DNA of 64,000 nt, taken from positions 62,001-126,000 of the IMG/VR virus record IMGVR_UViG_3300043409_000928; one strand, given 5' to 3'. The stretch's first letter is position 1. Each line of letters opens with the position of its first letter. The position numbers and the translations under genes are program-made. A model generated the notes under the pieces. It searched no databases, had not been told where the DNA came from, and was given only the letters and a program-made list of their open reading frames with translations. Shown piece by piece: positions 13,913 to 49,145 of this stretch.

Positions 13913-15007
13913 TTACTCCTCAGCTACTTCTGCGTCTATTTCGCCATTGGGGCTAATAGCGCCTTGGTAGGCCAAGTCTGTACCACGGGCTACAATGTCT
14001 GCCATGATCTTATCTAAAATTCCATCGGAGTAACCTTTACGGAATTCTTTAATAATCTCACCATCCAAGGTAGTGTAGGAAAGTTTGTTGCCTTCTTTCT
14101 TGAGCCAACCGCGAGCTTCAAACAAGTCTACTAGGCCGCTGTATGGATCCATACCAGTGGTCCACGGAATTTCTACTTGCACACTTTCAAAGGGTTTTGA
14201 ATAGCGTGTTTTCATAATCTTACAAGCGGCACGAATACCATTTACTGTAGTGGTCTTGTTGCCATCAGCATCAACTTTGAGTTTGAGCTTTTTCATAGCC
14301 ACCACCATTGAGCTGGCGTAAACAAAGCCTGATCCACCGGTGATTTTGTCATCGGGGTCAAACATGTCTTGGCTTGCGTAAGTGTGGTTGGTGACAACCA
14401 AGCCAACTGGATGTGGTGCAATACGATTAACAGTATTCTTAATAAGAGCCGTCAATGCCTTGGCCTTACGACCCATGTCACCTTTCATGTCACCTGCTTC
14501 AAACTGGTTAATGTCTGTTGGAGTCAACAACATACCAACAGAGTCGATTACAAACAATACTTTCTTTTGTTCTTCGTATGGAAGATCTGCGTAGGCTTCT
14601 TTGTATTCTTTCATGAACTCAGAGATAAACTTTGCCACTTCGTCAATCATTGATACACCAAAGCGCATCAACTTATCCGGAGCAGTATCAATGCCCAATG
14701 AACGTAACCATTCTTCGTCCAGTGCATTTTCACTGTCTAATATAACTGGAAGGATATCCAGCTTTTGTGCATGTCGAACCAGGTTACCTGAACAGATATA
14801 ACTTTTACCTGAACCAGATTCACCGGCAAACATTGTTACCTTGCCAAGTGGAATGCCACGACCAAAGTCGCCGGTCATCAAATAGTTAAGTGTATGATTG
14901 CCTGTGCTGATCCAATCTCTTGGATCGTTAAAGCCAGAACTCATTGCTGGAATGGCTTTGGTTAAGTTTTTACGAAACTTAGAAACGTCAAATGCTTTCT
15001 GTACCAT
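13913..15007 (-). CDS. uvsX: RecA/UvsX recombinase
   Basis: GESGSGKS, ILDSENA, VIDSVG, TNHTY, GGSG, KTRY. Confidence 0.93.
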   Translation of the reverse strand: MVQKAFDVSKFRKNLTKAIPAMSSGFNDPRDWISTGNHTLNYLMTGDFGRGIPLGKVTMFAGESGSGKSYICSGNLVRHAQKLDILPVILDSENALDEEWLRSLGIDTAPDKLMRFGVSMIDEVAKFISEFMKEYKEAYADLPYEEQKKVLFVIDSVGMLLTPTDINQFEAGDMKGDMGRKAKALTALIKNTVNRIAPHPVGLVVTNHTYASQDMFDPDDKITGGSGFVYASSMVVAMKKLKLKVDADGNKTTTVNGIRAACKIMKTRYSKPFESVQVEIPWTTGMDPYSGLVDLFEARGWLKKEGNKLSYTTLDGEIIKEFRKGYSDGILDKIMADIVARGTDLAYQGAISPNGEIDAEVAEE

Positions 15008-15029
15008 TGTATTATCCTTATAGATGATA

Positions 15030-15051
15030 GGAGGGTAGATCTCTACCCTCC
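15030..15051. other. Stable hairpin between gp32 and recA, no U-tract
   Basis: GGAGGGTAGA-TC-TCTACCCTCC. Processing or mRNA-stabilising role is an inference. Confidence 0.6.
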
Positions 15052-15060
15052 TTTGTTCAA

Positions 15061-16038
15061 TTAAGCTGAACGACTACGAATCATCTTTAGGATGTCATCG
15101 ACGCTGGGCTTTGCGGCTCCAGCAGGTGCGGCCACTGCGGTTGTTACTGTCGGAGCAGGCGCGGCCACTGCGGCAGGCTTGCTTGCTACTACTGGAGTGT
15201 CTTCATCAGCGTCAGCAACTGCCCCTGCTGTAGAAGCAGATGCGGTAAGTTGAACACCACTTGGACGATAAAACTTGCTCCACTTTTCTGGATCATACAA
15301 CTGACCATCAACACTGGCTTCAAACATTTCCATGATAGCACGAACTTCGTCTACACCTGGACGCTTGGGCATAAAGTCGTTCAAGTTGAACAGGCCGTGT
15401 GTTGCAATTGCTTGCAATTCCACTTCGTTCAAGCCACGCTCTTTACGTGCCCAACCTGATGTTGAGTAGTCAGCATAGCCACCCTTTTGCGTCTTGTTCA
15501 AACGGAAGTCTGTGCCACGCATGTAGTCTGTTGGCAATTCTTCCATGTCAGGATCCATTAAGGCCTGTTTGATCAAGGTAAAGATCTGTGGGCTGATGAT
15601 GAAACGGCGCACTGGATTTTCTGGAACACTTGATTCTTCCATTGGGCTGTTGACAACAAAACCTTGGAAAACATAACTGCGTTTCTTCCAATATTTGCGT
15701 CCAAGTGTTTCCATGTTGGGATCTTTGAACCAAGGACGGATTGTTGCGTGAACTGGACATGTTTCGTTCCACATTTCAACGCAAGGTACTTGAACAATAA
15801 CTTTCTTGTTTTCGTCTTGTCCCTTGACTCCCGGGAACTCAATACGAATCATTTGACGCTCACGCCAAAAGAATGTATTTGTGTCATCTCCATCTGGGAG
15901 AAAACGCATTGATGCGGATGTGCCTTCGGGGATATTCCAGTGTGCGTAAATTGCGTTATCACCGGTGCTGGTATTAGAACCACCAGACTTTTGTGCTTGC
16001 TCGGCTAGGCGAGCGCGGATTTCTGCTAAAGTTGCCAT
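15061..16038 (-). CDS. gp32: Single-stranded DNA-binding protein, gp32-like
   Basis: [37 protein letters not shown], flexible C-terminal tail. Confidence 0.88.
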
Positions 16039-28845: not shown

Positions 28846-28867
28846 TATATATTTCTCCTAGTGTTAT

Positions 28868-31252: not shown

Positions 31253-31297
31253 ATAATATCTCCGTTATCTAAGGGTTATTCATACCCTTCATGGAGA

Positions 31298-31303
31298 TAT
31301 TTA
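31298..31303 (-). promoter_or_regulatory. Late promoter TAAATA of the sheath gene
   Basis: Overlaps the 5' arm of an SD-occluding hairpin. Confidence 0.75.
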
Positions 31304-32015: not shown

Positions 32016-32642
32016 TTACTTTTCGTATTTTACCATAAAGTCGGTACAGGTTCTGTACATTTGTGGGACCAAGTTCTTTTCTTTTTCAATTAGCCTATGT
32101 AGGTCTACAAATTGCTCTGCATAGTTTACTGCTCTTAATGCATTCAAAACCAACTCTACACAACTTACATGAGTGTCATCTGCCAAGTCAAACAAGTCAT
32201 CGTACGGCTTACCCTGTTGTTTTAGTAAAGCATCAATAATTTTGGTCCACTCTGTATTGTCAATGTTATTTGGTGTCAGTAAACAAACTGAATCACAAGC
32301 AAATACTTGATCAAATGTAGAATAGTGTACACCTACCCCAGTGGCTTCTACAAACTTAAAGCTGGCAGTATCTGTTGGATCAGTGATATTATCGCAGTTC
32401 ATTAAGGCATGAGTATAGTTTGCCCATATACCAGTCTTGGCCCATGACAAGAATGAAACTATAATACTACTAAGATGGTGCTTCTCTCCTGTTAAGATAA
32501 TGTAATATCCACTGGCCAGCACTTGGGCAATTTCCGTTTTATCAGTTACCGTAACGTAGGTTTTTTTGCTCCAAGAAATTTTGCCCGGCATCATTGCTAC
32601 CCAATGGTATAGCTTGTATAATAGTGTGGAATACTTAGACAT
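32016..32642 (-). CDS. Permuted papain-like NlpC/P60 (YiiX/YebB-type) enzyme
   Basis: His before Cys: YTHAL...GKPYDDLF...SCVELV. Confidence 0.75.
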   Translation of the reverse strand: MSKYSTLLYKLYHWVAMMPGKISWSKKTYVTVTDKTEIAQVLASGYYIILTGEKHHLSSIIVSFLSWAKTGIWANYTHALMNCDNITDPTDTASFKFVEATGVGVHYSTFDQVFACDSVCLLTPNNIDNTEWTKIIDALLKQQGKPYDDLFDLADDTHVSCVELVLNALRAVNYAEQFVDLHRLIEKEKNLVPQMYRTCTDFMVKYEK

Positions 32643-33394
32643 TATCCAAAAATAAATCCCAGTGGTGTTCCACCTTCGGAATATGTTTTTAAATCTTCCT
32701 CAAGCTTTTCCATTTCTGCTTGACCTTGGGCAATTAGGTCGTTGCCGTTTAGCTGTACACCACCTTGCGGACCGGCTAATTGACTGTACTTGCTACGAGC
32801 TTGGCCAAGTGTAAGCTTAGAAACTGCAAGAGCAAATTCACGCACCCAAGGTCCGGAACTGGTGTCTAGTAACAGCATTTCATCTGGGCGATAGTTATAA
32901 GTGTGTACAATAATACTTTCTTCAGCTTTCAAATAACGCTGTAGATTTAATCTCTTGCTGGTGTTAGACCAGTTATACACCAGGTAGGCTCCAAACATTG
33001 TTGCCATTAATTCACGCTGTCCCATGTACAATTCAAAAGATGCTAGGCCACCTTGTCTGATTGAATTCAACATGTACATGTTTAAGTAGCCTGCTTCAAA
33101 GGGATCAAATCCTGTTGCACCACTACTGTCGCTCATGCCGCCGCTATTTGCACGGTATACATTTCGTACATCAATTACTTCATTTGGTAGTGTGTATTCG
33201 CTTTCTCCTGGCGTAATTTGTAACACCATAAAGCTTTCTTCTACCGCCCGACTACTACGCTGACGATATTTGGATACGGCACGATCAATTGCCATATCGT
33301 AGTGTTCTTTATCCAGCTCTACATCAACCATACCTCCGCCGAGGTTCAGTTCAATATATTTTTGAGCTTTAGATCTTTGTGTTGTTTCTGACAT
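32642..33394 (-). CDS. gp13: Neck protein, gp13-like
   Basis: LGGGMVDVELDKEHY, LGQARSKY, GGVQLNG, PLGFIFG. Confidence 0.85.
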   Translation of the reverse strand: MSETTQRSKAQKYIELNLGGGMVDVELDKEHYDMAIDRAVSKYRQRSSRAVEESFMVLQITPGESEYTLPNEVIDVRNVYRANSGGMSDSSGATGFDPFEAGYLNMYMLNSIRQGGLASFELYMGQRELMATMFGAYLVYNWSNTSKRLNLQRYLKAEESIIVHTYNYRPDEMLLLDTSSGPWVREFALAVSKLTLGQARSKYSQLAGPQGGVQLNGNDLIAQGQAEMEKLEEDLKTYSEGGTPLGFIFG

Positions 33395-33410
33395 AGGGTG
33401 TCTCCAGGAC

Positions 33411-33416
33411 TATTTA
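33411..33416 (-). promoter_or_regulatory. Late promoter TAAATA of gp13, inside a hairpin loop
   Basis: Lies in the loop of the 11-bp inverted repeat at 33393-33431. Confidence 0.75.
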
Positions 33417-33436
33417 CCGAAGACACCCTATAAAAC

Positions 33437-34690
33437 TTACTTGATTGCTCGGAGCAAGATCGTTTCTGGACTAATGCGTCCTTTTAGCCTTGTTTCCACT
33501 GACCTAATGGTGTCCATAAACTTACGCAATCCGGGCTTGCCTTGTGTCTTAAACTCTGCCAGCTTTTCTGCGGGTTTACGCAAGGTCTTGCAGGTGCTCT
33601 TGATCTCATCAAAGCCAATGATAGCAGAGCCCTTAACGCCCAACTGTCCCACTACCATGTCGCCATGCATGGCTACAACAAAGCGACCCAACTTACGAGT
33701 CTTGGTATTGTAAGTCCACAGCTCACTCATTTCTAGAATCTCAGTTGGATTGATACTCTTAAGACCCAGCTCAGCAAACTCTCTAAGATACTTTAGACCT
33801 TTAACTTGGCGCTCAGGTGGCACAGGCTTGCGCTTGGGTTTGGCACGGGTGGCTATTTTACTAGTCTTGTATGCACTGGCATCATTGATGATTGCCTCGT
33901 AGAACTTGATTAATGCTTTGACATCACGCTTGTTCATGTGTTTGTAACCCTCCATGAGCTGGCTGTCTCTTCCTTCTAGCAATTCATTTAGTTCGTTAAT
34001 TTTAGGTTGTATTACTTCTGCCACTTTGGCAATGTATTGCACAGAAATGTTTTGCCCTTGGAAGAATTTGTAAGCAGAAAATTCCTTGCCTTCTAAAATA
34101 TAGTCGTCAATTGCTCCTTCAACTTCTCCCATTGCTTCGCTGAACTTTTCAGCAAGCCTGTCTTGTATTGTTTCTTTTTTGACTACTGGTACTGCTGGAT
34201 CAACTACCACAGTTTTCTCAGACGCAAGACGAGCTTCCAAGTTTCCAATTAGCTGATGGATGTGACGCTCCTCATCATTTTGCAGTTCAAATCCTGCCAG
34301 CACCATACGGCACACCCAACCAACTGTTAAAGTATACTGGCTGTCATTGACTGATTTGAACTTGGCAGGATAATGTGCCAATTCTTCTTTGGTAGCACAG
34401 TATGCGTCAAAGAACGCCCTGGCATCTTTATGGTCACAGGAGTAGTTGTACCAGTTAAACGCACGGCTCATTTGAATCCTGCGTTGTACTTCATCCCATG
34501 CGGCTTGTTCGGTCCATTCTGGTTCATGCCCCATACGATGGATGTCTGTGACTTGGATGGCTTTTAGCTTGGGCTTGCCACTGGCATCAAATTTTACTGT
34601 ACCAGAGTCTTTGGCAGTACGAGTGCTTCGGCCCAGTGTTTTTTTCTTTTTAGGGGGTTTTGCGACTGTGCGTTTTGTTGCTGTGGCCAT
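33437..34690 (-). CDS. Early protein of unknown function, 417 aa
   Basis: SD GGAG, perfect sigma70 promoter, basic N-terminus. Confidence 0.8.
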   Translation of the reverse strand: MATATKRTVAKPPKKKKTLGRSTRTAKDSGTVKFDASGKPKLKAIQVTDIHRMGHEPEWTEQAAWDEVQRRIQMSRAFNWYNYSCDHKDARAFFDAYCATKEELAHYPAKFKSVNDSQYTLTVGWVCRMVLAGFELQNDEERHIHQLIGNLEARLASEKTVVVDPAVPVVKKETIQDRLAEKFSEAMGEVEGAIDDYILEGKEFSAYKFFQGQNISVQYIAKVAEVIQPKINELNELLEGRDSQLMEGYKHMNKRDVKALIKFYEAIINDASAYKTSKIATRAKPKRKPVPPERQVKGLKYLREFAELGLKSINPTEILEMSELWTYNTKTRKLGRFVVAMHGDMVVGQLGVKGSAIIGFDEIKSTCKTLRKPAEKLAEFKTQGKPGLRKFMDTIRSVETRLKGRISPETILLRAIK

Positions 34691-34721: not shown

Positions 34722-34750
34722 ATTATAACTTATCTTTGCGAACCTGTCAA
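34722..34750 (-). promoter_or_regulatory. Perfect consensus sigma70 promoter
   Basis: TTGACA-17-TATAAT. Confidence 0.92.
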
Positions 34751-34765
34751 GTGACATCTAAGCGG

Positions 34766-34771
34766 TAAATA
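34766..34771 (+). promoter_or_regulatory. Late promoter TAAATA of the gp14/gp15 operon
   Basis: Back-to-back with the sigma70 promoter. Confidence 0.7.
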
Positions 34772-34809: not shown

Positions 34810-35913
34810 ATGCCTAAAATATCACTTTGGAAAAACGCCAAGACGCAAGACTTTTACTTTCAGGATCGAATTATCCGTGAAGCAGTGGGTGCTGGCGGAA
34901 CTACATTTTTGGTCCATAAGTATCTTGGACCTGCGGCAGTTGAGGACGGATCTGATCCGGCCAAGCCAAATTTGTCGGCTCAAAATGAAATTACAGAATT
35001 AGACATGCAAGACTTGCTGTTTATGGAAAACCGTGATCGGGTATATGATACTTCCATTTATGAATTGCGTGGGACATATAATGTGACCGACCAGGACTTT
35101 GACTTGAGTCAGTTTGGTTTGTTTTTAAATGCCGACACGCTGTTTATTACATTCCATACAAACGAAATGGTTGATCGTTTAGGACGTAAATTGATGGCTG
35201 GTGATGTCATTGAAGTTCCGCACTTGAATGACGACTTGCTATTGGATGCTACTGCAAAAAGCATTAACAAATTTTATGCAGTCCAGGATGCTAGTCGCGC
35301 CGCAGAAGGATTTGGTCCAACTTGGTGGCCGCACTTGTGGCGTATCAAAGTTGCCCCTATTAATGATGCACAAGAGTATCGTAGTATCTTGGGTGACCCC
35401 GAAGATGCTGACAGTTTAAAAAATGCACTGAGCACTTATCAGACCGAAATTAAAATTAATAATGCAATTTTAGCCAGTGCTGAAATGATGACTCCAACAG
35501 TTGGTTATAAAAATCCAGAGCTCAATGATCCAACTTATGTTCCAACTATTAATGTTATGTCAACTGGTGGGATATCTGACAATACTGTTAACACTAGAGA
35601 GTATGCGGCATCCAAAGGTGACACTACTGGAATTGCGAACGGCTTGTCATTTCCACAAAGTCCAGATCAGGGAGAATTGTTTATTCGTATGGACTTCCGT
35701 CCACAAAGACTTTTTGTATTCCGAGGCAATCGTTGGCACAGAGTTCTTGATAATGTAGATCAGTCCAATTGGAGAATTAATACTGTTAATGCTGGCGATT
35801 TTATTGATAACAACACAGGCACATCAGTTAATAATTTAAGCACTACAAAAGACACAATTGATCAAAAGCAAGCACTGAGCAAGGTGTTTACAAAACCTAA
35901 GGCAGATAATTAA
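34810..35913 (+). CDS. gp14: Neck/head-closure protein, gp14-like
   Basis: DLLFMENRDR, LSQFGLF, GDVIEVPH, structural-cluster context. Confidence 0.7.
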   Translation: MPKISLWKNAKTQDFYFQDRIIREAVGAGGTTFLVHKYLGPAAVEDGSDPAKPNLSAQNEITELDMQDLLFMENRDRVYDTSIYELRGTYNVTDQDFDLSQFGLFLNADTLFITFHTNEMVDRLGRKLMAGDVIEVPHLNDDLLLDATAKSINKFYAVQDASRAAEGFGPTWWPHLWRIKVAPINDAQEYRSILGDPEDADSLKNALSTYQTEIKINNAILASAEMMTPTVGYKNPELNDPTYVPTINVMSTGGISDNTVNTREYAASKGDTTGIANGLSFPQSPDQGELFIRMDFRPQRLFVFRGNRWHRVLDNVDQSNWRINTVNAGDFIDNNTGTSVNNLSTTKDTIDQKQALSKVFTKPKADN

Positions 35914-43225: not shown

Positions 43226-43255
43226 AAAAGGGTGCAAGTTTCCTTGCACCCTTTT
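43226..43255 (-). terminator. Terminator with GNRA loop
   Basis: AAAAGGGTGCAAG-GAAA-CTTGCACCCTTTT on the minus strand. Confidence 0.88.
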
Positions 43256-43282: not shown

Positions 43283-46200
43283 TTAGTATACACCACCATC
43301 AATTGAACTTGATTCGTTTAGAACACCACCAGCTGTCAAGCTAGAAGTAGAGCTTACACGAACAAAGATATAATCGCCATCTGCAGGAGCTTCAGTCATA
43401 ACAATACTTGATACACTACTAGCTGTGACAAGTGTGTAAGAGTATGTAGGTGCTTGGATTAAACCGTTAATAAACACTTGCGTGTTATCAATTGAGCTTA
43501 CTTCAACACCTGTACTGAATGATGTAGTTGAACCGTTACCAGTGAAGTTTAATGTTGTGGCTGTAACAGCAATGTTCTGTGGAACAAAGTTAGAAAGCGC
43601 ACTAGACCAAACCAATGTGTAACCATCTTGCAAACCACTTGTTAAATCAACATCAGACAATGCACCAACGCTGGCGGCTGCAATACGAGCATCTGCACGA
43701 TTATTCGTGTAATACAAGTTAACTGCACCTTCATCAATTGCATCAGTGGTTGGTGTTACAAAGGTAAACACACCAGTTGCACTGTTGTAGGCTAAGATAT
43801 TAGCATCATCTGATGTTAATGTAATAGCTGAACGAGCCTGAGCATTTGTAAACCATTTGTTTGTACGACCAACATCAGAGATGTCATCACTTGTCAATAC
43901 AACAACGCCTGTTTGTGAGTTAACACTATGAACTGCGGCCAATGTACTGATAACACCAGTACTTGCATCATATACAATGTTACTACCGTTGCTGATGCTG
44001 TTACGAGCACGAGTTGTTGTGAAGTACTGGTTAGTTGCGCCTTCTACTACATCATCTGTAGTTGAATTAGCCAAGTTGAATACAAATACACCAGTTGCAC
44101 TGTCATATGACAATACTGAGTTTTTGCTTGTGGTCAAACTAACAGCGCCTCTGGCACGAGTATTAGTAAAGTATTGGTTAACTGGTGAAGCACCTTCTGC
44201 TACATCATCAGTAACCAATGAGTAACTGGCTCCCAATGCAATAGCATGACCGTTAACTGTAACTCCACTATTTGTCAAACTTGCATTTGGAATACTTGCA
44301 AGAGCAATAACACCAGTTGCTGAGTCATATGTAGCACCGCTTGCTGTTGTTGCGCTTAGGGCTTGACGAATATTTGCATCTGTCACTTTGGCGTATGTGA
44401 ATACACCTGCGGCATAAGTCAAATCACCCCAACCAGTACCACTTGTTGCGGCACTAAAGTGGGCGCGAGCTTCTGTAGCACTTGGACCTGTGTATGTAAA
44501 TGCACCAGTTGCTGAGTCATATGCAAAACTGCCATCACCACCTGCATCGACTCCACTTAATGCACCACGAGCACGAGTATTTGTAAAGTACATTGTACCA
44601 CTTGTTACTGTTGCGGCTGGATCTTCTGTTAGGTCACTGGTGTCATGATTACTAATATCACTTACTTGTCCTGTTACATTACCAGTCAATGGTGCTGTTA
44701 CACCAGCAAAAGTAACACTAGAACCTGTGCCAACTGCTTGACCAATTGCAACAGATGTACCAGTTACTGTAACGCCTGTACCAGCGGTAACCACTGTAAT
44801 GTCAGCACTACCATTGAAGCTTACGCCTTGAATATTACGGGCAGTTGCCAATGTTGTTGTTGTGGTTGCGTTACCAGTTAAGTCGCCGGTTACATTGCCT
44901 GTAACATTGCCTGTAACATTGCCTGTTAGGTTACCAGTAAATGTCGGAGCAGTCAATGTAGTTGTTACACTTAAACCACCTGTAATCGCAACAGTCTTGT
45001 TGAAGTTCCAGCTATCTGTACCACTTGCGTATGTTAATGTTGCACTGGCACCATCAACTGTTAAACCAGCACCATTGGCAGCGGCTGCGTTCGCGGCTCC
45101 CTTGGCAACTGTGATGTTTAAGTCATTGATTTCAACTATAGTTGATTGAATAGATGTTAGTGTACCTTGAACTGTTAAGTCGCCGCTAACTGTTACATCA
45201 CCAAAAGTAACGTCACTTGTTGTACCAACTGCTTGACCAATTTCAAATACACCTGTACCAGCTGTGTATGTTACACCTGTACCACCACTAACGTCTGCAC
45301 GAGTGCGGGCTGTTGTGTAGTATAGGTTAGCGCCTTCTGTAAGATTGGTAGTTGACTTGGTAGCTAACTGAGTATCAAATCTTGCTGTTGTGTAGTATAG
45401 ATTTGAGCCTTCTGCAAGATTGGTAGTTGACTTGGTAGCAAGTCTTGTGTCCCATCGTGCATCTGTCAAGTACTTGTTAGTACCACCAACAGCTTCAGCA
45501 ATGTCATCAGCGTTTAGTGTTGCACTACCACCTAAGGCAATAACAGCACCGTTGACTGTGACTGAGCTGTTTGTCAAACTTGCATTTGGAATACTTGCAA
45601 GAGCAATAACACCAGTTGCTGAGTCATATGTAGCACCGCTTGCTGTTGTAGCACTTAAATTACCACGAACATCAGCGGCTGTTACTTTGGCAAATGTAAC
45701 TACACCAGTTGCTGAGTCATATGTTAATCCACCAAAGCCAGTACCACTTGTTGCGGCACTTAATGCTTGACGAATGTTTGCATCTGTTACTTTTGCATAA
45801 GTGAATACGCCTGCGGCATAAGTCAAATCACCCCAACCAGTACCACTTGTTGCGGCGCTTACGTGAGCACGAACTTCTGTAGCACTTGGACCTGTGTACG
45901 TCATTACACCAGTTGCTGAGTTGTATGCAAAACTGCCGTCACCGCCTACATCAACTGCACTCAGTGCGGCTTGAGCACGAGCATTTGTAAAGTACATTGT
46001 ACCACTTGATGCTGTTGCGGCTGGATCTTCTATGACATCAGTTGTATCTGGAGCAATAATGTCAATGACACCTGTTCCAGAAGTATAGCTTAGGTTAGCC
46101 CAACCTGTTGCACTAATTGAAGCACGGGCTCTTGCATCTGTATAATATAAGTTTGTACCTTCAGCAATATCAGTTGTTGATGGCATTACAAAAGTAAACA

Positions 46201-48838: not shown

Positions 48839-48870
48839 AATAGCTCTCCTATGAACTATTTACCAGAGGA

Positions 48871-49119: not shown

Positions 49120-49145
49120 AGAAAAGGCTCCAAAGAGCCTTTTCT
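49120..49145 (-). terminator. Terminator of the head operon
   Basis: AGAAAAGGCTC-4 nt-GAGCCTTTTCT. Confidence 0.88.

What the first reader, a model, noticed from the sequence alone, without database searches (positions are those of the whole stretch)
33393..33431. Late promoter inside an 11-bp hairpin that hides the gp13 SD and start codon
Seen (minus strand): AUAGGGUGUCU-UCGG[UAAAUA]GUCCUGG-AGACACCCUAU-G. The 3' arm covers part of the GGAGA SD and the AU of AUG. Read-through from the perfect sigma70 promoter at 34722-34750 contains both arms, and no terminator intervenes. A transcript starting 5 nt after TAAATA lacks the 5' arm. Known: T4 uses this logic for e, soc, 49 and I-TevI. Inference: translational lock-out of a neck protein on early mRNA.
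Basis: partly seen in the sequence, partly recalled or inferred. Interest (0 to 1): 0.7.

Follow-up and report, generated by a model that had tools for sequence, protein, structure and literature searches.

The report
Hairpin lock on phage neck gene
An uncultured freshwater jumbo phage hides the ribosome-binding site of its neck-protein gene in a conserved RNA hairpin whose loop holds the phage's late promoter, so the gene can probably be translated only from late transcripts; this trick is known from phage T4, and here it also turns up across a distant lineage of giant phages.

Summary
On the minus strand an 11-bp perfect inverted repeat (33431-33421 / 33403-33393) extends to a 15-bp RNA stem. 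The stem pairs the whole GGAGA Shine-Dalgarno (SD) and the AU of the neck-gene AUG. TAAATA (33416-33411) sits in the 9-nt loop.

The window is part of a 285-kb jumbo phage contig distantly related to PA5oct and Rak2-like phages. T4's TATAAATA is not this phage's motif. TAAATA is the most enriched hexamer upstream of genes, it precedes structural and lysis genes, and the genome encodes a gp55-family late sigma factor.

A 12/12 sigma70 promoter (34750-34722) drives the upstream 417-aa gene, and no credible terminator precedes the hairpin.

In 33 distinct relatives the box is invariant while the arms covary (82.9% of cells paired vs 36-39% in slid controls; 0/500 shuffles). More distant clades and cultured Rak2-like phages sequester the same SD/AUG with different stems.

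Opening the SD-to-AUG segment costs about 20 kcal/mol on read-through RNA and about 2.7 kcal/mol on the predicted late RNA.

The late start site and the timing are untested. This is a new member of a known kind.

The parts
34722..34750 (-). Sigma70-type promoter (TTGACA-17-TATAAT, 12/12) that drives ORF417. It is the only 12/12 sigma70 promoter inside the structural gene block.
   Evidence: Conserved upstream of the ORF417 homologue in about 36 of 39 distinct relatives.
34766..34771 (+). Divergent CGG-TAAATA-GC late box that serves the plus-strand virion structural gene 34810-35913.
   Evidence: The gene matches phrog_11591. The box is conserved in relatives, where it appears as TATTTACCG on the ORF417 strand.
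33437..34690 (-). ORF417, a conserved protein of unknown function and the presumed early or middle gene whose transcript reads into the hairpin.
   Evidence: phrog_11903. No Pfam, PDB or Atlas lead. The homologue PA5oct gp292 lies directly upstream of that phage's neck gene and does not carry the ESI-MS/MS virion note that the neck, dNMP kinase and sheath genes carry.
33417..33431 (-). 5' arm AUAGGGUGUCU+UCGG, the anti-SD strand. It begins 5 nt after the ORF417 stop codon and ends at the box.
   Evidence: Covaries with the 3' arm.
33411..33416 (-). TAAATA box, the predicted gp55-type late promoter core, in the hairpin loop (loop = 33416-33408, UAAAUAGUC).
   Evidence: Invariant in 33 of 33 aligned relatives. 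Genome-wide enrichment. Context (C/G)G(C/G)-TAAATA-G is shared with other late genes. The related jumbo phages CBB and GAP32 have a predicted ATAAATA late motif (PMC5259590).
33405..33405 (-). Predicted late transcription start (+1), the first G of GGAGA. This is an inference and has not been mapped.
   Evidence: The T4 box occupies -13 to -6 (PMC2988020). The box-to-SD distance is conserved at 4-6 nt. At about eight sites in this genome the SD begins 4-9 nt after a TAAATA box.
33393..33407 (-). 3' arm CUGG+AGACACCCUAU. It contains the SD GGAGA (33405-33401) and the AU of the start codon.
   Evidence: Opening cost of the SD-to-AUG segment is 19.8-20.7 kcal/mol on read-through RNA and 2.6-3.3 kcal/mol on RNA starting at 33404-33408.
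32642..33394 (-). Neck protein / head-tail adaptor gene (T4 gp13-like), 250 aa, the regulated gene.
   Evidence: phrog_211, 4.3e-35. T4 gp13 chains 9mkb and 9lu4, E 1.4e-5. 36-43% identity to neck proteins of PA5oct, XaC1 and GAP32.

Best explanation
This is a temporal translational lock of the T4 e / soc / I-TevI type, in an uncultured freshwater jumbo phage.

Proposed mechanism:
1. Host sigma70 RNA polymerase starts at the consensus promoter at 34750-34722. It transcribes ORF417 and, with no terminator in the way, continues into the neck gene.
2. On that RNA the anti-SD strand (33431-33417) pairs with 33407-33393. This buries the whole GGAGA and the AU of the AUG in a 15-bp stem, so 30S subunits cannot bind.
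3. The stem lies mostly outside the footprint of a ribosome terminating at the ORF417 stop codon, so translation of the upstream gene does not open it.
4. Late in infection the phage's gp55-family sigma factor directs polymerase to the TAAATA box in the loop.
5. Transcription then starts about 6 nt downstream, at or next to the first G of GGAGA. The late mRNA lacks the 5' arm and carries an open SD at its extreme 5' end.

Shown: the stem, its selection on the sense RNA, the promoter motifs and their conservation, the late sigma gene, and the calculated accessibility difference.

Inferred: the late start site, the early timing of the sigma70 promoter, and the effect on translation.

In cultured Rak2-like relatives the equivalent hairpin is followed by a U-run, so there it probably also terminates upstream transcription. 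In this phage the U-run is absent.
For: Structure. The 11-nt perfect repeat extends to 15 bp, dG -25.2 kcal/mol, z -5.26. Among about 33 upstream TAAATA sites in the genome this is the strongest pairing between sequence 5' of the box and the SD/AUG region (z -7.0, -23.6 kcal/mol). The element is unique in the genome.

Selection.
- In 33 distinct relatives (61-75% neck-protein identity) 82.9% of cells pair, against 36-39% when partners are slid.
- Covariation score is 0.287 against 0.186 in shuffles, and 0 of 500 shuffles reach it.
- Pairs switch GC/AU, GC/CG/UA and AU/UA.
- 58 of 484 cells are G.U (my tally from the pair table), which places the constraint on the sense RNA.

Convergent solutions at the same junction.
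- The clade L045-L055 and L068 pair the AUG with sequence overlapping the box.
- Clades at 45-48% identity place the anti-SD in the last ORF417 codons.
- Six cultured phages have anti-SD/CTAAATA/SD hairpins (z -3.9 to -6.7) with covarying SDs: CACCUC/GAGGUG, CCCCU/AGGGG and UCCUC/GAGGA. They are K64-1, Ecwhy_1, Hallingskeid, fHe-Yen9-04, XaC1 and GAP32.
- Three phages with a divergent upstream gene have the box but no significant hairpin.

Promoters. TAAATA enrichment is 49 vs 8.2 expected. The box lies in front of late genes. A gp55-family sigma factor is encoded, E 2.7e-91. The sigma70 promoter is 12/12 with no terminator downstream and is conserved in relatives. Sigma70-type promoters otherwise cluster in arms of small ORFs.

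Energetics. Opening cost is about 20 kcal/mol on long RNA and about 2.7 kcal/mol on short RNA. In most main-clade relatives it remains 12-20 kcal/mol with a ribosome parked on the upstream stop codon.

RNA. Contigs from RNA libraries span both arms: X21 33322-33558 with no mismatch, plus X20, X24 and X19.

Precedent. PMC3014915 and PMC2988022.
Against: - No 5' end has been mapped. +1 at 33405 rests on the analogy with T4.
- The predicted late mRNA would have no leader in front of its SD. This is unusual, although the same spacing recurs at the tail tube and other late genes here.
- The metatranscriptome evidence consists of unstranded, shallow assembled contigs, and carry-over of DNA cannot be excluded.
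- Six contig ends from six runs cluster at 33381-33393, just 3' of the stem. These could be 3' ends of ORF417 mRNA held by the stem, reverse-transcriptase stops, or a processing site, and not late 5' ends.
- PA5oct, the closest cultured relative with the same ORF417-neck gene pair, has the box but no significant hairpin (z 0.0). The lock is therefore dispensable in at least one lineage.
- In the distant clades the 5' arm lies inside ORF417, so translating ribosomes would open it. There the element may couple translation of the two genes and not lock the second one.
- The inner stem (UCUCCGG/CCGGAGA) is constrained by the SD, and possibly by promoter context, so only the outer pairs are informative.
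Confidence: 0.7

Rival explanations
1. The hairpin is mainly a 3'-end element for the upstream ORF417 message: a terminator, an exonuclease barrier or a processing signal. Its overlap with the neck SD would then be a by-product of a 42-nt intergenic space.
For: In GAP32, XaC1, fHe-Yen9-04 and Ecwhy_1 the equivalent hairpin is followed by 6-8 U, so it is terminator-like. Contigs from RNA libraries covering the ORF417 3' end plus the whole stem stop at 33381-33387 in X19, X20 and X24, as expected for 3' ends trimmed back to a stable stem. The absence of the hairpin where the upstream gene is divergent fits this reading as well as it fits the lock.
Against: In this phage and its whole clade the stem is followed directly by AUG and coding sequence, with no U-run. 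No terminator was called there. One perfect-match contig from an RNA library reads through to 33322. The clade L045-L055 and L068 have replaced the strong stem with a 7-9-bp pairing of the AUG across a roughly 20-nt loop, which would be a poor barrier but still hides the start site. In every lineage it is specifically the SD or AUG that is paired, and the anti-SD covaries with different SD sequences. The two functions are not mutually exclusive.
Confidence: 0.15
2. The hairpin enforces translational coupling, or is the operator of an RNA-binding repressor. Neck-protein synthesis from polycistronic RNA would then be tuned, not blocked, and the TAAATA in the loop would be a protein- or ribosome-recognition feature and not a promoter.
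For: In the distant clades (L069-L081) and in PA5oct the ORF417 stop codon overlaps the box and the 5' arm lies in coding sequence, so ribosomes would open the stem. The loop sequence is invariant, as it is for operators such as that of T4 gene 43 (PMC3014915).
Against: In the main clade the stem stays closed with a ribosome on the stop codon (12-20 kcal/mol in most relatives). TAAATA is enriched upstream of about 30 other genes that have no hairpin, and those are typically late genes. That pattern fits a promoter, not a hairpin-specific operator. A gp55-family sigma factor is encoded.
Confidence: 0.07
3. The inverted repeat acts at the DNA level. A cruciform or single-stranded hairpin would present the late box to polymerase, as in phage N4 early promoters, or would serve as a protein-binding palindrome.
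For: The box lies exactly in the loop, and the box and the GG in front of it are invariant. T4 late transcription is favoured by supercoiling (PMC2988020).
Against: 12% of stem cells are G.U pairs, including two in this phage's own UCGG/CUGG extension. These are mismatches in DNA and on the opposite strand. Only a handful of the roughly 33 TAAATA sites show any hairpin, so a hairpin is not a property of the promoter. The paired partner is always the SD or AUG.
Confidence: 0.03

Closest known systems
T4 gene e (lysozyme) leader: an RBS-sequestering hairpin bypassed by late promoters (PMC3014915)
   Same: The SD and/or AUG lie in a stable helix on long early transcripts. [quoted passage not shown] The late sigma factor is of the gp55 type.
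   Different: The regulated gene here is the neck protein, not a lysis enzyme. The box is TAAATA (GGTAAATA), not TATAAATA. The box sits in the loop, and the predicted +1 coincides with the SD. The phage is a distant 285-kb jumbo phage. Nothing has been shown experimentally here.
T4 I-TevI, I-TevII, I-TevIII, segB and Aeh1 mobE hairpins (PMC2988022)
   Same: A late promoter is positioned so that late transcripts cannot form the RBS-sequestering hairpin. The regulated gene is embedded in an early or middle transcription unit.
   Different: Those genes encode homing endonucleases inside or beside host genes, with the added rationale of intron splicing or toxicity. Here an essential virion gene sits at an early-to-late operon boundary, and the design is conserved over a much wider phylogenetic range.
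T4 soc, 49, 25 and 26 translational control by mRNA structure (PMC2988022, PMC3014915)
   Same: Late structural or late-acting genes lie on polycistronic early or middle RNAs and are repressed by secondary structure at the translation initiation region.
   Different: No homology of sequence or gene. T4 gene 13 itself is not on those papers' lists of genes controlled this way.
Predicted ATAAATA late promoters of the Rak2-like jumbo phages CBB and GAP32 (PMC5259590)
   Same: The same core motif upstream of structural genes, together with a gp55-like sigma factor.
   Different: In the passages I retrieved, that work reported the motif and, separately, rho-independent terminators. I found no mention of the box being embedded in an SD-sequestering hairpin at the neck gene, which searches show for GAP32 and five other cultured phages.

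Membership tests
T4-type late-promoter-bypassed RBS-sequestering hairpin (e / soc / 49 / I-TevI class) | A stable RNA helix that includes the SD and/or the start codon of a late gene | tested here: met
   A 15-bp stem pairs all of GGAGA and the AU of the AUG. dG -25.2 kcal/mol, z -5.26. Opening cost is about 20 kcal/mol.
T4-type late-promoter-bypassed RBS-sequestering hairpin (e / soc / 49 / I-TevI class) | The helix is maintained by selection (compensatory changes in relatives) | tested here: met
   33 distinct relatives: 82.9% of cells paired vs 36-39% in slid controls, 0 of 500 shuffles reach the score, six pairs with changes on both sides. Non-homologous stems do the same job in other clades and in cultured phages.
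T4-type late-promoter-bypassed RBS-sequestering hairpin (e / soc / 49 / I-TevI class) | A late promoter is placed so that late transcripts start downstream of the 5' strand of the helix | tested here: inconclusive
   The box position is met: TAAATA lies in the loop at 33416-33411, and by T4 geometry +1 falls at 33405 (PMC2988020). The start site itself could not be mapped. Contigs from RNA libraries are unstranded and end at 33381-33393.
T4-type late-promoter-bypassed RBS-sequestering hairpin (e / soc / 49 / I-TevI class) | An upstream early or middle promoter whose transcripts read through the helix | tested here: met
   A 12/12 sigma70 promoter with no credible terminator after it, conserved in relatives. 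Contigs from RNA libraries carry both arms. The temporal class is inferred, not measured.
T4-type late-promoter-bypassed RBS-sequestering hairpin (e / soc / 49 / I-TevI class) | A gp55-type late sigma system that uses a -10-only box | tested here: met
   phrog_12791, late sigma factor, E 2.7e-91, at G000:C1:126631-127461. T4 gp55 matches the same ORF at 1.6e-5. TAAATA is enriched upstream of late genes. gp33 and gp45 homologues were not searched.
T4-type late-promoter-bypassed RBS-sequestering hairpin (e / soc / 49 / I-TevI class) | Translation is repressed on long transcripts and active on late transcripts | not testable with these tools
   Only calculated accessibility is available. Reporter fusions or toeprinting are needed.
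Canonical T4 late promoter TATAAATA | Match to the 8-bp consensus TATAAATA | tested here: not met
   The site reads GGTAAATA. TATAAATA occurs only 4+4 times in 285 kb. The phage's own consensus is about (C/G)G(C/G)-TAAATA-G.
Intrinsic (rho-independent) terminator | A G+C-rich stem followed directly by a U-tract | tested here: not met
   The stem is followed by GUCAGAAACA and was not called by the scan. The feature is met in the cultured relatives GAP32, XaC1, fHe-Yen9-04 and Ecwhy_1.
Any curated RNA family (Rfam 15) | Covariance-model match | tested here: not met
   No match at E <= 1 in 33200-33650 on either strand.

The most novel reading that the evidence does not exclude
The roughly 40-nt 'anti-SD / late box / SD' cassette in front of the neck gene may be a lineage-wide boundary marker of jumbo phages of the Rak2, PA5oct and freshwater groups. 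Selection would have rebuilt it repeatedly with unrelated sequences: at least four stem designs, with or without a U-run, and with the box in the loop or in the 5' arm. It would combine three functions in one element: the end of the early message, the late promoter, and a translational lock. That would imply that early synthesis of the gp13-like neck protein is specifically harmful, for example by capping portals before DNA packaging. It would also imply that late mRNAs in these phages typically begin right at their SD.
Probability: 0.4. Interest if true: 0.55.

Novelty: new member of a known kind. Interest (0 to 1): 0.4.

Why it matters
The mechanism itself is well known from T4, so this finding does not open a new category. 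It contributes three things.

1. It shows the device outside the Tevenvirinae-like phages where it was described. The host is an uncultured 285-kb freshwater phage, and covariation support is stronger than what the T4 review reports for its own cases, which is similar predicted leader structures in close relatives (PMC3014915).
2. The same junction, between a non-structural gene and the neck gene, carries functionally equivalent but non-homologous hairpins in distant clades and in six cultured jumbo phages. The hairpin is absent where no read-through is possible. This suggests strong, recurrent selection against untimely neck-protein synthesis.
3. It gives annotators a practical rule. In these genomes, hairpins called as terminators upstream of late genes may contain the late promoter and the SD.

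It also names cultured phages in which the idea can be tested directly: GAP32, K64-1, XaC1 and fHe-Yen9-04.

Tried and rejected
- **Near-identity DNA search in the phage collection:** no match. Relatives were reached only through the protein.
- **T4 TATAAATA as the late motif:** rejected. It occurs 4+4 times in the genome.
- **TAAGTA, the second most enriched upstream hexamer, as a promoter:** rejected. It has no consistent context or spacing and mostly reflects stop codons such as TGA-TAA-GTA.
- **Dispersed-repeat or mobile-cassette origin of the hairpin:** rejected. There is a single copy in the genome at up to 3 mismatches.
- **Function of ORF417:** Pfam, the PDB sequence search and the ESM Atlas gave nothing usable. 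I did not fold it.
- **PA5oct experimental timing for the ORF417 homologue:** no supplementary files are held. The main text reports only sigma70-like promoters. The RaK2 paper mentions no late promoter.
- **Mapping the late 5' end from metatranscriptomes:** not possible.
- **Tail-sheath leader as a second proven instance:** RNAalifold did not recover the long-range stem. Explicit pair counting shows 90.6% pairing but no double-sided covariation, and 57 of 500 shuffles reach the score. I kept it only as a candidate.
- **Translational coupling through a terminating ribosome in the main clade:** unlikely, because the stem stays closed. Three rows of that table (L021, L023, L050) had mis-assigned stop codons and were ignored.
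- **Malformed query:** one literature query was malformed and was repeated.
Full report
**1. What is there**

Read on the minus strand, the 42-nt spacer between a 417-aa ORF (33437-34690) and a 250-aa ORF (32642-33394) contains these elements:
- the ORF417 stop codon UAA (33439-33437) followed by GUUUU;
- the 5' arm AUAGGGUGUCU (33431-33421);
- UCGG, UAAAUA (33416-33411), GUC and CUGG;
- the 3' arm AGACACCCUAU (33403-33393);
- the AUG at 33394-33392, whose AU lies in the 3' arm.

The repeat finder reports the arms as 11 nt, 100% complementary and 17 nt apart. Only about eight perfect inverted repeats of this size and spacing exist in the 64 kb.

The minimum-energy fold adds UCGG/CUGG (two G-C and two G.U pairs). 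This gives a 15-bp stem with a 9-nt loop, UAAAUAGUC. The fold has dG -25.2 kcal/mol and z -5.26, and no shuffle out of 200 folds as well.

**2. What genome this is**

The window is bases 62001-126000 of a 285,304-bp IMG/VR virus contig. It has no near-identical DNA among deposited phages.

The 250-aa protein is a head-tail adaptor / neck protein. It matches phrog_211 at 4.3e-35 and solved T4 gp13 chains at E 1.4e-5. Its best deposited relatives are neck proteins of XaC1, PA5oct, Atu_ph07 and the Rak2-like phages at 36-43% identity.

Neighbouring genes include a dNMP kinase, tail sheath, tail tube, a gp15-like sheath stabiliser, fibres and the major head protein. This is a distant, T4-related jumbo myovirus from fresh water.

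**3. Is TAAATA a late promoter here?**

T4's TATAAATA is not the motif. It occurs 4+4 times in 285 kb.

TAAATA is the most enriched hexamer in the 100 nt upstream of ORFs: 49 genes against 8.2 expected. Its recurrent context is (C/G)G(C/G)-TAAATA-G.

In the window it precedes the tail tube, the sheath, the neck, a tail fibre, a tape-measure-like protein, a holin-like protein and virion structural proteins.

The genome encodes a gp55-family late sigma factor (phrog_12791, E 2.7e-91). T4 gp55 itself matches the same ORF at 1.6e-5. The gene lies just beyond the window's right end and has its own sigma70-like promoter.

An ATAAATA late motif and a gp55-like sigma factor have already been predicted for the related jumbo phages CBB and GAP32 (PMC5259590).

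In the hairpin loop the six box positions are invariant in all 33 aligned relatives, while the following loop bases vary.

I regard TAAATA as this phage's late-promoter core with about 0.8 confidence. No start site has been mapped.

**4. The upstream promoter and read-through**

TTGACA-17-TATAAT (12/12) lies at 34750-34722 on the minus strand, 32 nt before the ORF417 start. It sits back to back with a CGG-TAAATA-GC box (34766-34771, plus strand) for the divergent virion gene.

No credible minus-strand terminator lies between that promoter and the hairpin.

Genome-wide, promoters matching sigma70 at 11/12 or better cluster in two arms of small ORFs. This is the only 12/12 copy inside the structural block.

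The promoter, ORF417 and the divergent box are conserved in about 36 of 39 distinct relatives.

The ORF417 homologue in PA5oct (gp292) also sits directly upstream of the neck gene. Unlike its neighbours, it is not flagged as detected in the virion. Its function is unknown.

**5. Comparative evidence for the helix**

A protein-based scan of IMG/VR returned 80 loci at 45-75% neck-protein identity.

In the main clade the layout is fixed:
- stop codon, then 5-12 nt, then the 5' arm, then (U/C)CGG-TAAATA, then 3-4 nt, then C(U/C)GG and the 3' arm, then AUG;
- the box-to-SD distance is 5 nt (6 nt in one subclade);
- the 3' arm spans -14 to between +4 and +9.

The arms change in concert:
- GUGUCUCC/GGAGACAC
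- GUGCCUCC/GGAGGCAC
- GCAGUCU/AGACUGC
- UAGUCUCC/GGAGACUA
- GGUAUCUCC/GGAGAUACC

On 33 distinct sequences:
- 82.9% of cells form standard pairs, against 36-39% when the 3' partner is slid by 1-3 columns;
- the covariation score is 0.287 against 0.186 +/- 0.009 in shuffles, and 0 of 500 shuffles reach it;
- three pairs alternate among GC, AU, CG and UA in substantial numbers.

About 12% of cells are G.U (my tally from the pair table). These would be A.C on the complementary strand, so the constraint acts on the sense RNA.

**6. Different stems, same outcome**

- **Clade L045-L055, L066 and L068.** The strong stem is replaced by a 7-9-bp pairing between sequence overlapping the box (..UGCCAU|AAAUA) and the AUG plus six coding bases. 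One compensatory pair distinguishes subclades: AACUGCCAU/AUGGCAGUU against AAUUGCCAU/AUGGCAAUU.
- **The 45-48% clades.** The neck protein has a 48-aa N-terminal extension. The anti-SD lies in the last ORF417 codons, the stop codon overlaps the box (CAA-UAA-AUA), and hairpins of -15 to -25 kcal/mol again pair the SD.
- **Cultured jumbo phages with a co-directional upstream gene.** K64-1, the 121Q-like Ecwhy_1, Erwinia Hallingskeid, Yersinia fHe-Yen9-04, XaC1 and GAP32 all carry a significant hairpin (z -3.9 to -6.7). The anti-SD and the CTAAATA box form or adjoin the 5' arm, and the SD is in the 3' arm. The SD differs between phages (GAGGUG, AGGGG, GAGGA) and the anti-SD follows it. In GAP32, XaC1, fHe-Yen9-04 and Ecwhy_1 a U-run follows the stem.
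- **Phages with a divergent upstream gene.** Atu_ph07, Phosso and Vibrio 2.275.O keep the box but have no significant hairpin (z 0.1 to -2.3).
- **PA5oct is the exception.** Its upstream gene is co-directional, yet z = 0.0.

By my own hypergeometric count, 7 of 8 against 0 of 3 gives p of about 0.02. This is not corrected for phylogeny.

**7. Energetics and the ribosome question**

Making 33405-33392 single-stranded costs 19.8-20.7 kcal/mol on RNAs that include 60-200 nt of upstream sequence. It costs 2.6-3.3 kcal/mol on RNAs beginning at 33404-33408.

With the 12 nt after the first base of the ORF417 stop codon held single-stranded, mimicking a terminating ribosome, the cost is still 12.3 kcal/mol here and 12-20 kcal/mol in most main-clade relatives. 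With 15 nt blocked it falls to 5.5 kcal/mol in this phage. In this clade the element is therefore a lock, not a coupling device.

In the distant clades translating ribosomes would open it.

**8. Is it a general strategy in this genome?**

No. I scored about 33 upstream TAAATA sites for pairing between sequence 5' of the box and the SD/AUG region. The neck gene is the clear outlier (z -7.0).

Three further sites, all outside the window, show the same layout at lower significance. Two of them also have a U-run.

The tail-sheath leader may be another case. AAUAUCUCC, overlapping the proximal box, pairs with GGAGAUAUU, and a dNMP kinase gene with its own sigma70-like promoter lies upstream. Its support is limited to 90.6% pairing with only C/U changes opposite G.

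**9. RNA data**

Eight lake or freshwater metatranscriptomes hold parts of the region, as short, shallow, unstranded assembled contigs.
- Contigs with both arms exist: X21 33322-33558 with no mismatch, X20 33387-33546, X24 33381-33531 and X19 33387-33580. This argues against termination upstream of 33431, provided these contigs derive from RNA.
- X22 (33221-33422) runs past the box, so it is not a product of the late start.
- Neck-gene contigs stop at 33388, 33393 and 33381 in X15, X16 and X17.
- In total, six contig ends from six runs fall within 33381-33393, immediately 3' of the stem base.

Possible explanations for the cluster are 3' ends of ORF417 mRNA held by the stem, reverse-transcriptase stops, a cleavage site, or loss of coverage near a late 5' end at about 33405. 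I cannot tell them apart. The cluster is recorded as unexplained.

**10. Comparison with what is known**

[quoted passage not shown] They also describe it for I-TevI, and list soc, 49, 25, 26, I-TevII, I-TevIII, segB and Aeh1 mobE (PMC3014915, PMC2988022).

T4 late promoters are 8-bp boxes at -13 to -6 with no -35 element (PMC2988020). That places +1 at 33405 here.

Rfam has no family for the element. A full-text search found no description of a hairpin-embedded late promoter at the neck gene of jumbo phages. The library is incomplete.

**11. Verdict**

It is unproven at the level of start site, timing and translation.
- It is a new member of a known kind.
- Its main added value is the breadth and plasticity of the device across jumbo phages, and the cultured systems in which it can now be tested.

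Noticed in passing
window 33381-33393 (minus strand, just 3' of the stem base): Ends of assembled contigs from RNA libraries in six independent metatranscriptomes cluster here. Neck-gene contigs stop at 33381, 33388 and 33393. Contigs covering the ORF417 3' end plus the whole hairpin stop at 33381, 33387 and 33387. This may mark a real RNA end (exonuclease barrier or processing site) or reverse-transcriptase stops.
   Followed up: partly
window 31255-31303 (minus strand), tail sheath leader; sigma70-like promoter at 32010-31982: A possible second lock. The sheath SD GGAGAUAUU (31263-31255) can pair with AAUAUCUCC (31301-31293), which overlaps the proximal of two TAAATA boxes (31303-31298; the distal box is 31332-31327). 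The upstream dNMP kinase gene has its own sigma70-like promoter. In 30 relatives 90.6% of cells pair, but only C/U changes opposite G occur and there is no double-sided covariation.
   Followed up: partly
G000:C1:255175-255339, 239580-240068 and 45157-45825 (all minus strand, outside the window): Three further ORFs (54, 162 and 222 aa) have a TAAATA box inside or at the edge of a hairpin whose 3' arm carries the SD. Two of these hairpins are followed by a U-run, so they are terminator-like. They lie in the arms of small ORFs that are rich in sigma70 promoters.
   Followed up: partly
L088 (GAP32), L087 (XaC1), L091 (K64-1), L092 (Ecwhy_1), L093 (Hallingskeid), L094 (fHe-Yen9-04): the 70 nt upstream of each neck gene: Cultured Rak2-like jumbo phages carry an anti-SD / CTAAATA / SD hairpin in front of the neck gene (z -3.9 to -6.7), in four of the six followed by a U-run. 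Such hairpins are likely to be annotated as plain terminators. The SD sequence differs between phages and the anti-SD follows it.
   Followed up: partly
window 28846-28864 (tail tube leader), 48839-48856 and several sites outside the window: At about eight TAAATA sites, mostly in front of late genes, the SD begins only 4-9 nt after the box. By T4 promoter geometry these late mRNAs would start at or within a few bases of their SD, giving minimal leaders.
   Followed up: partly
G000:C1:126493-127479 (window-equivalent 64493-65479, beyond the window end): The gp55-family late sigma gene (328-aa ORF, phrog_12791) is preceded by a sigma70-like promoter, TTGACA-17-TATACT. This fits a late factor made from an early or middle transcript. 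gp33 and gp45 homologues were not searched.
   Followed up: partly
L069-L081, upstream of the neck homologue: In the most distant IMG/VR clades the neck protein has a 48-aa N-terminal extension. The stop codon of the ORF417 homologue overlaps the late box (CAA-TAA-ATA), so the 5' arm of the hairpin is coding sequence. PA5oct also has its box overlapping that stop codon.
   Followed up: partly
That means it was detected in virion preparations, which is odd for a nucleotide-metabolism enzyme.
   Followed up: no
window 43226-43255 and 49120-49145: Perfect 13- and 11-nt inverted repeats flanked by A-runs and T-runs (AAAAGGGTGCAAG / CTTGCACCCTTTT and AGAAAAGGCTC / GAGCCTTTTCT). They look like bidirectional intrinsic terminators in the structural block, one of them just downstream of the major head protein gene.
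   Followed up: no
window 15020-15061: A 20-nt imperfect inverted repeat (80% complementary) containing GGAGGGTAGA / TCTACCCTCC lies in the spacer between two minus-strand ORFs (15061-16038 and 13913-15007). It may be another structure involving an SD-like sequence.
   Followed up: no
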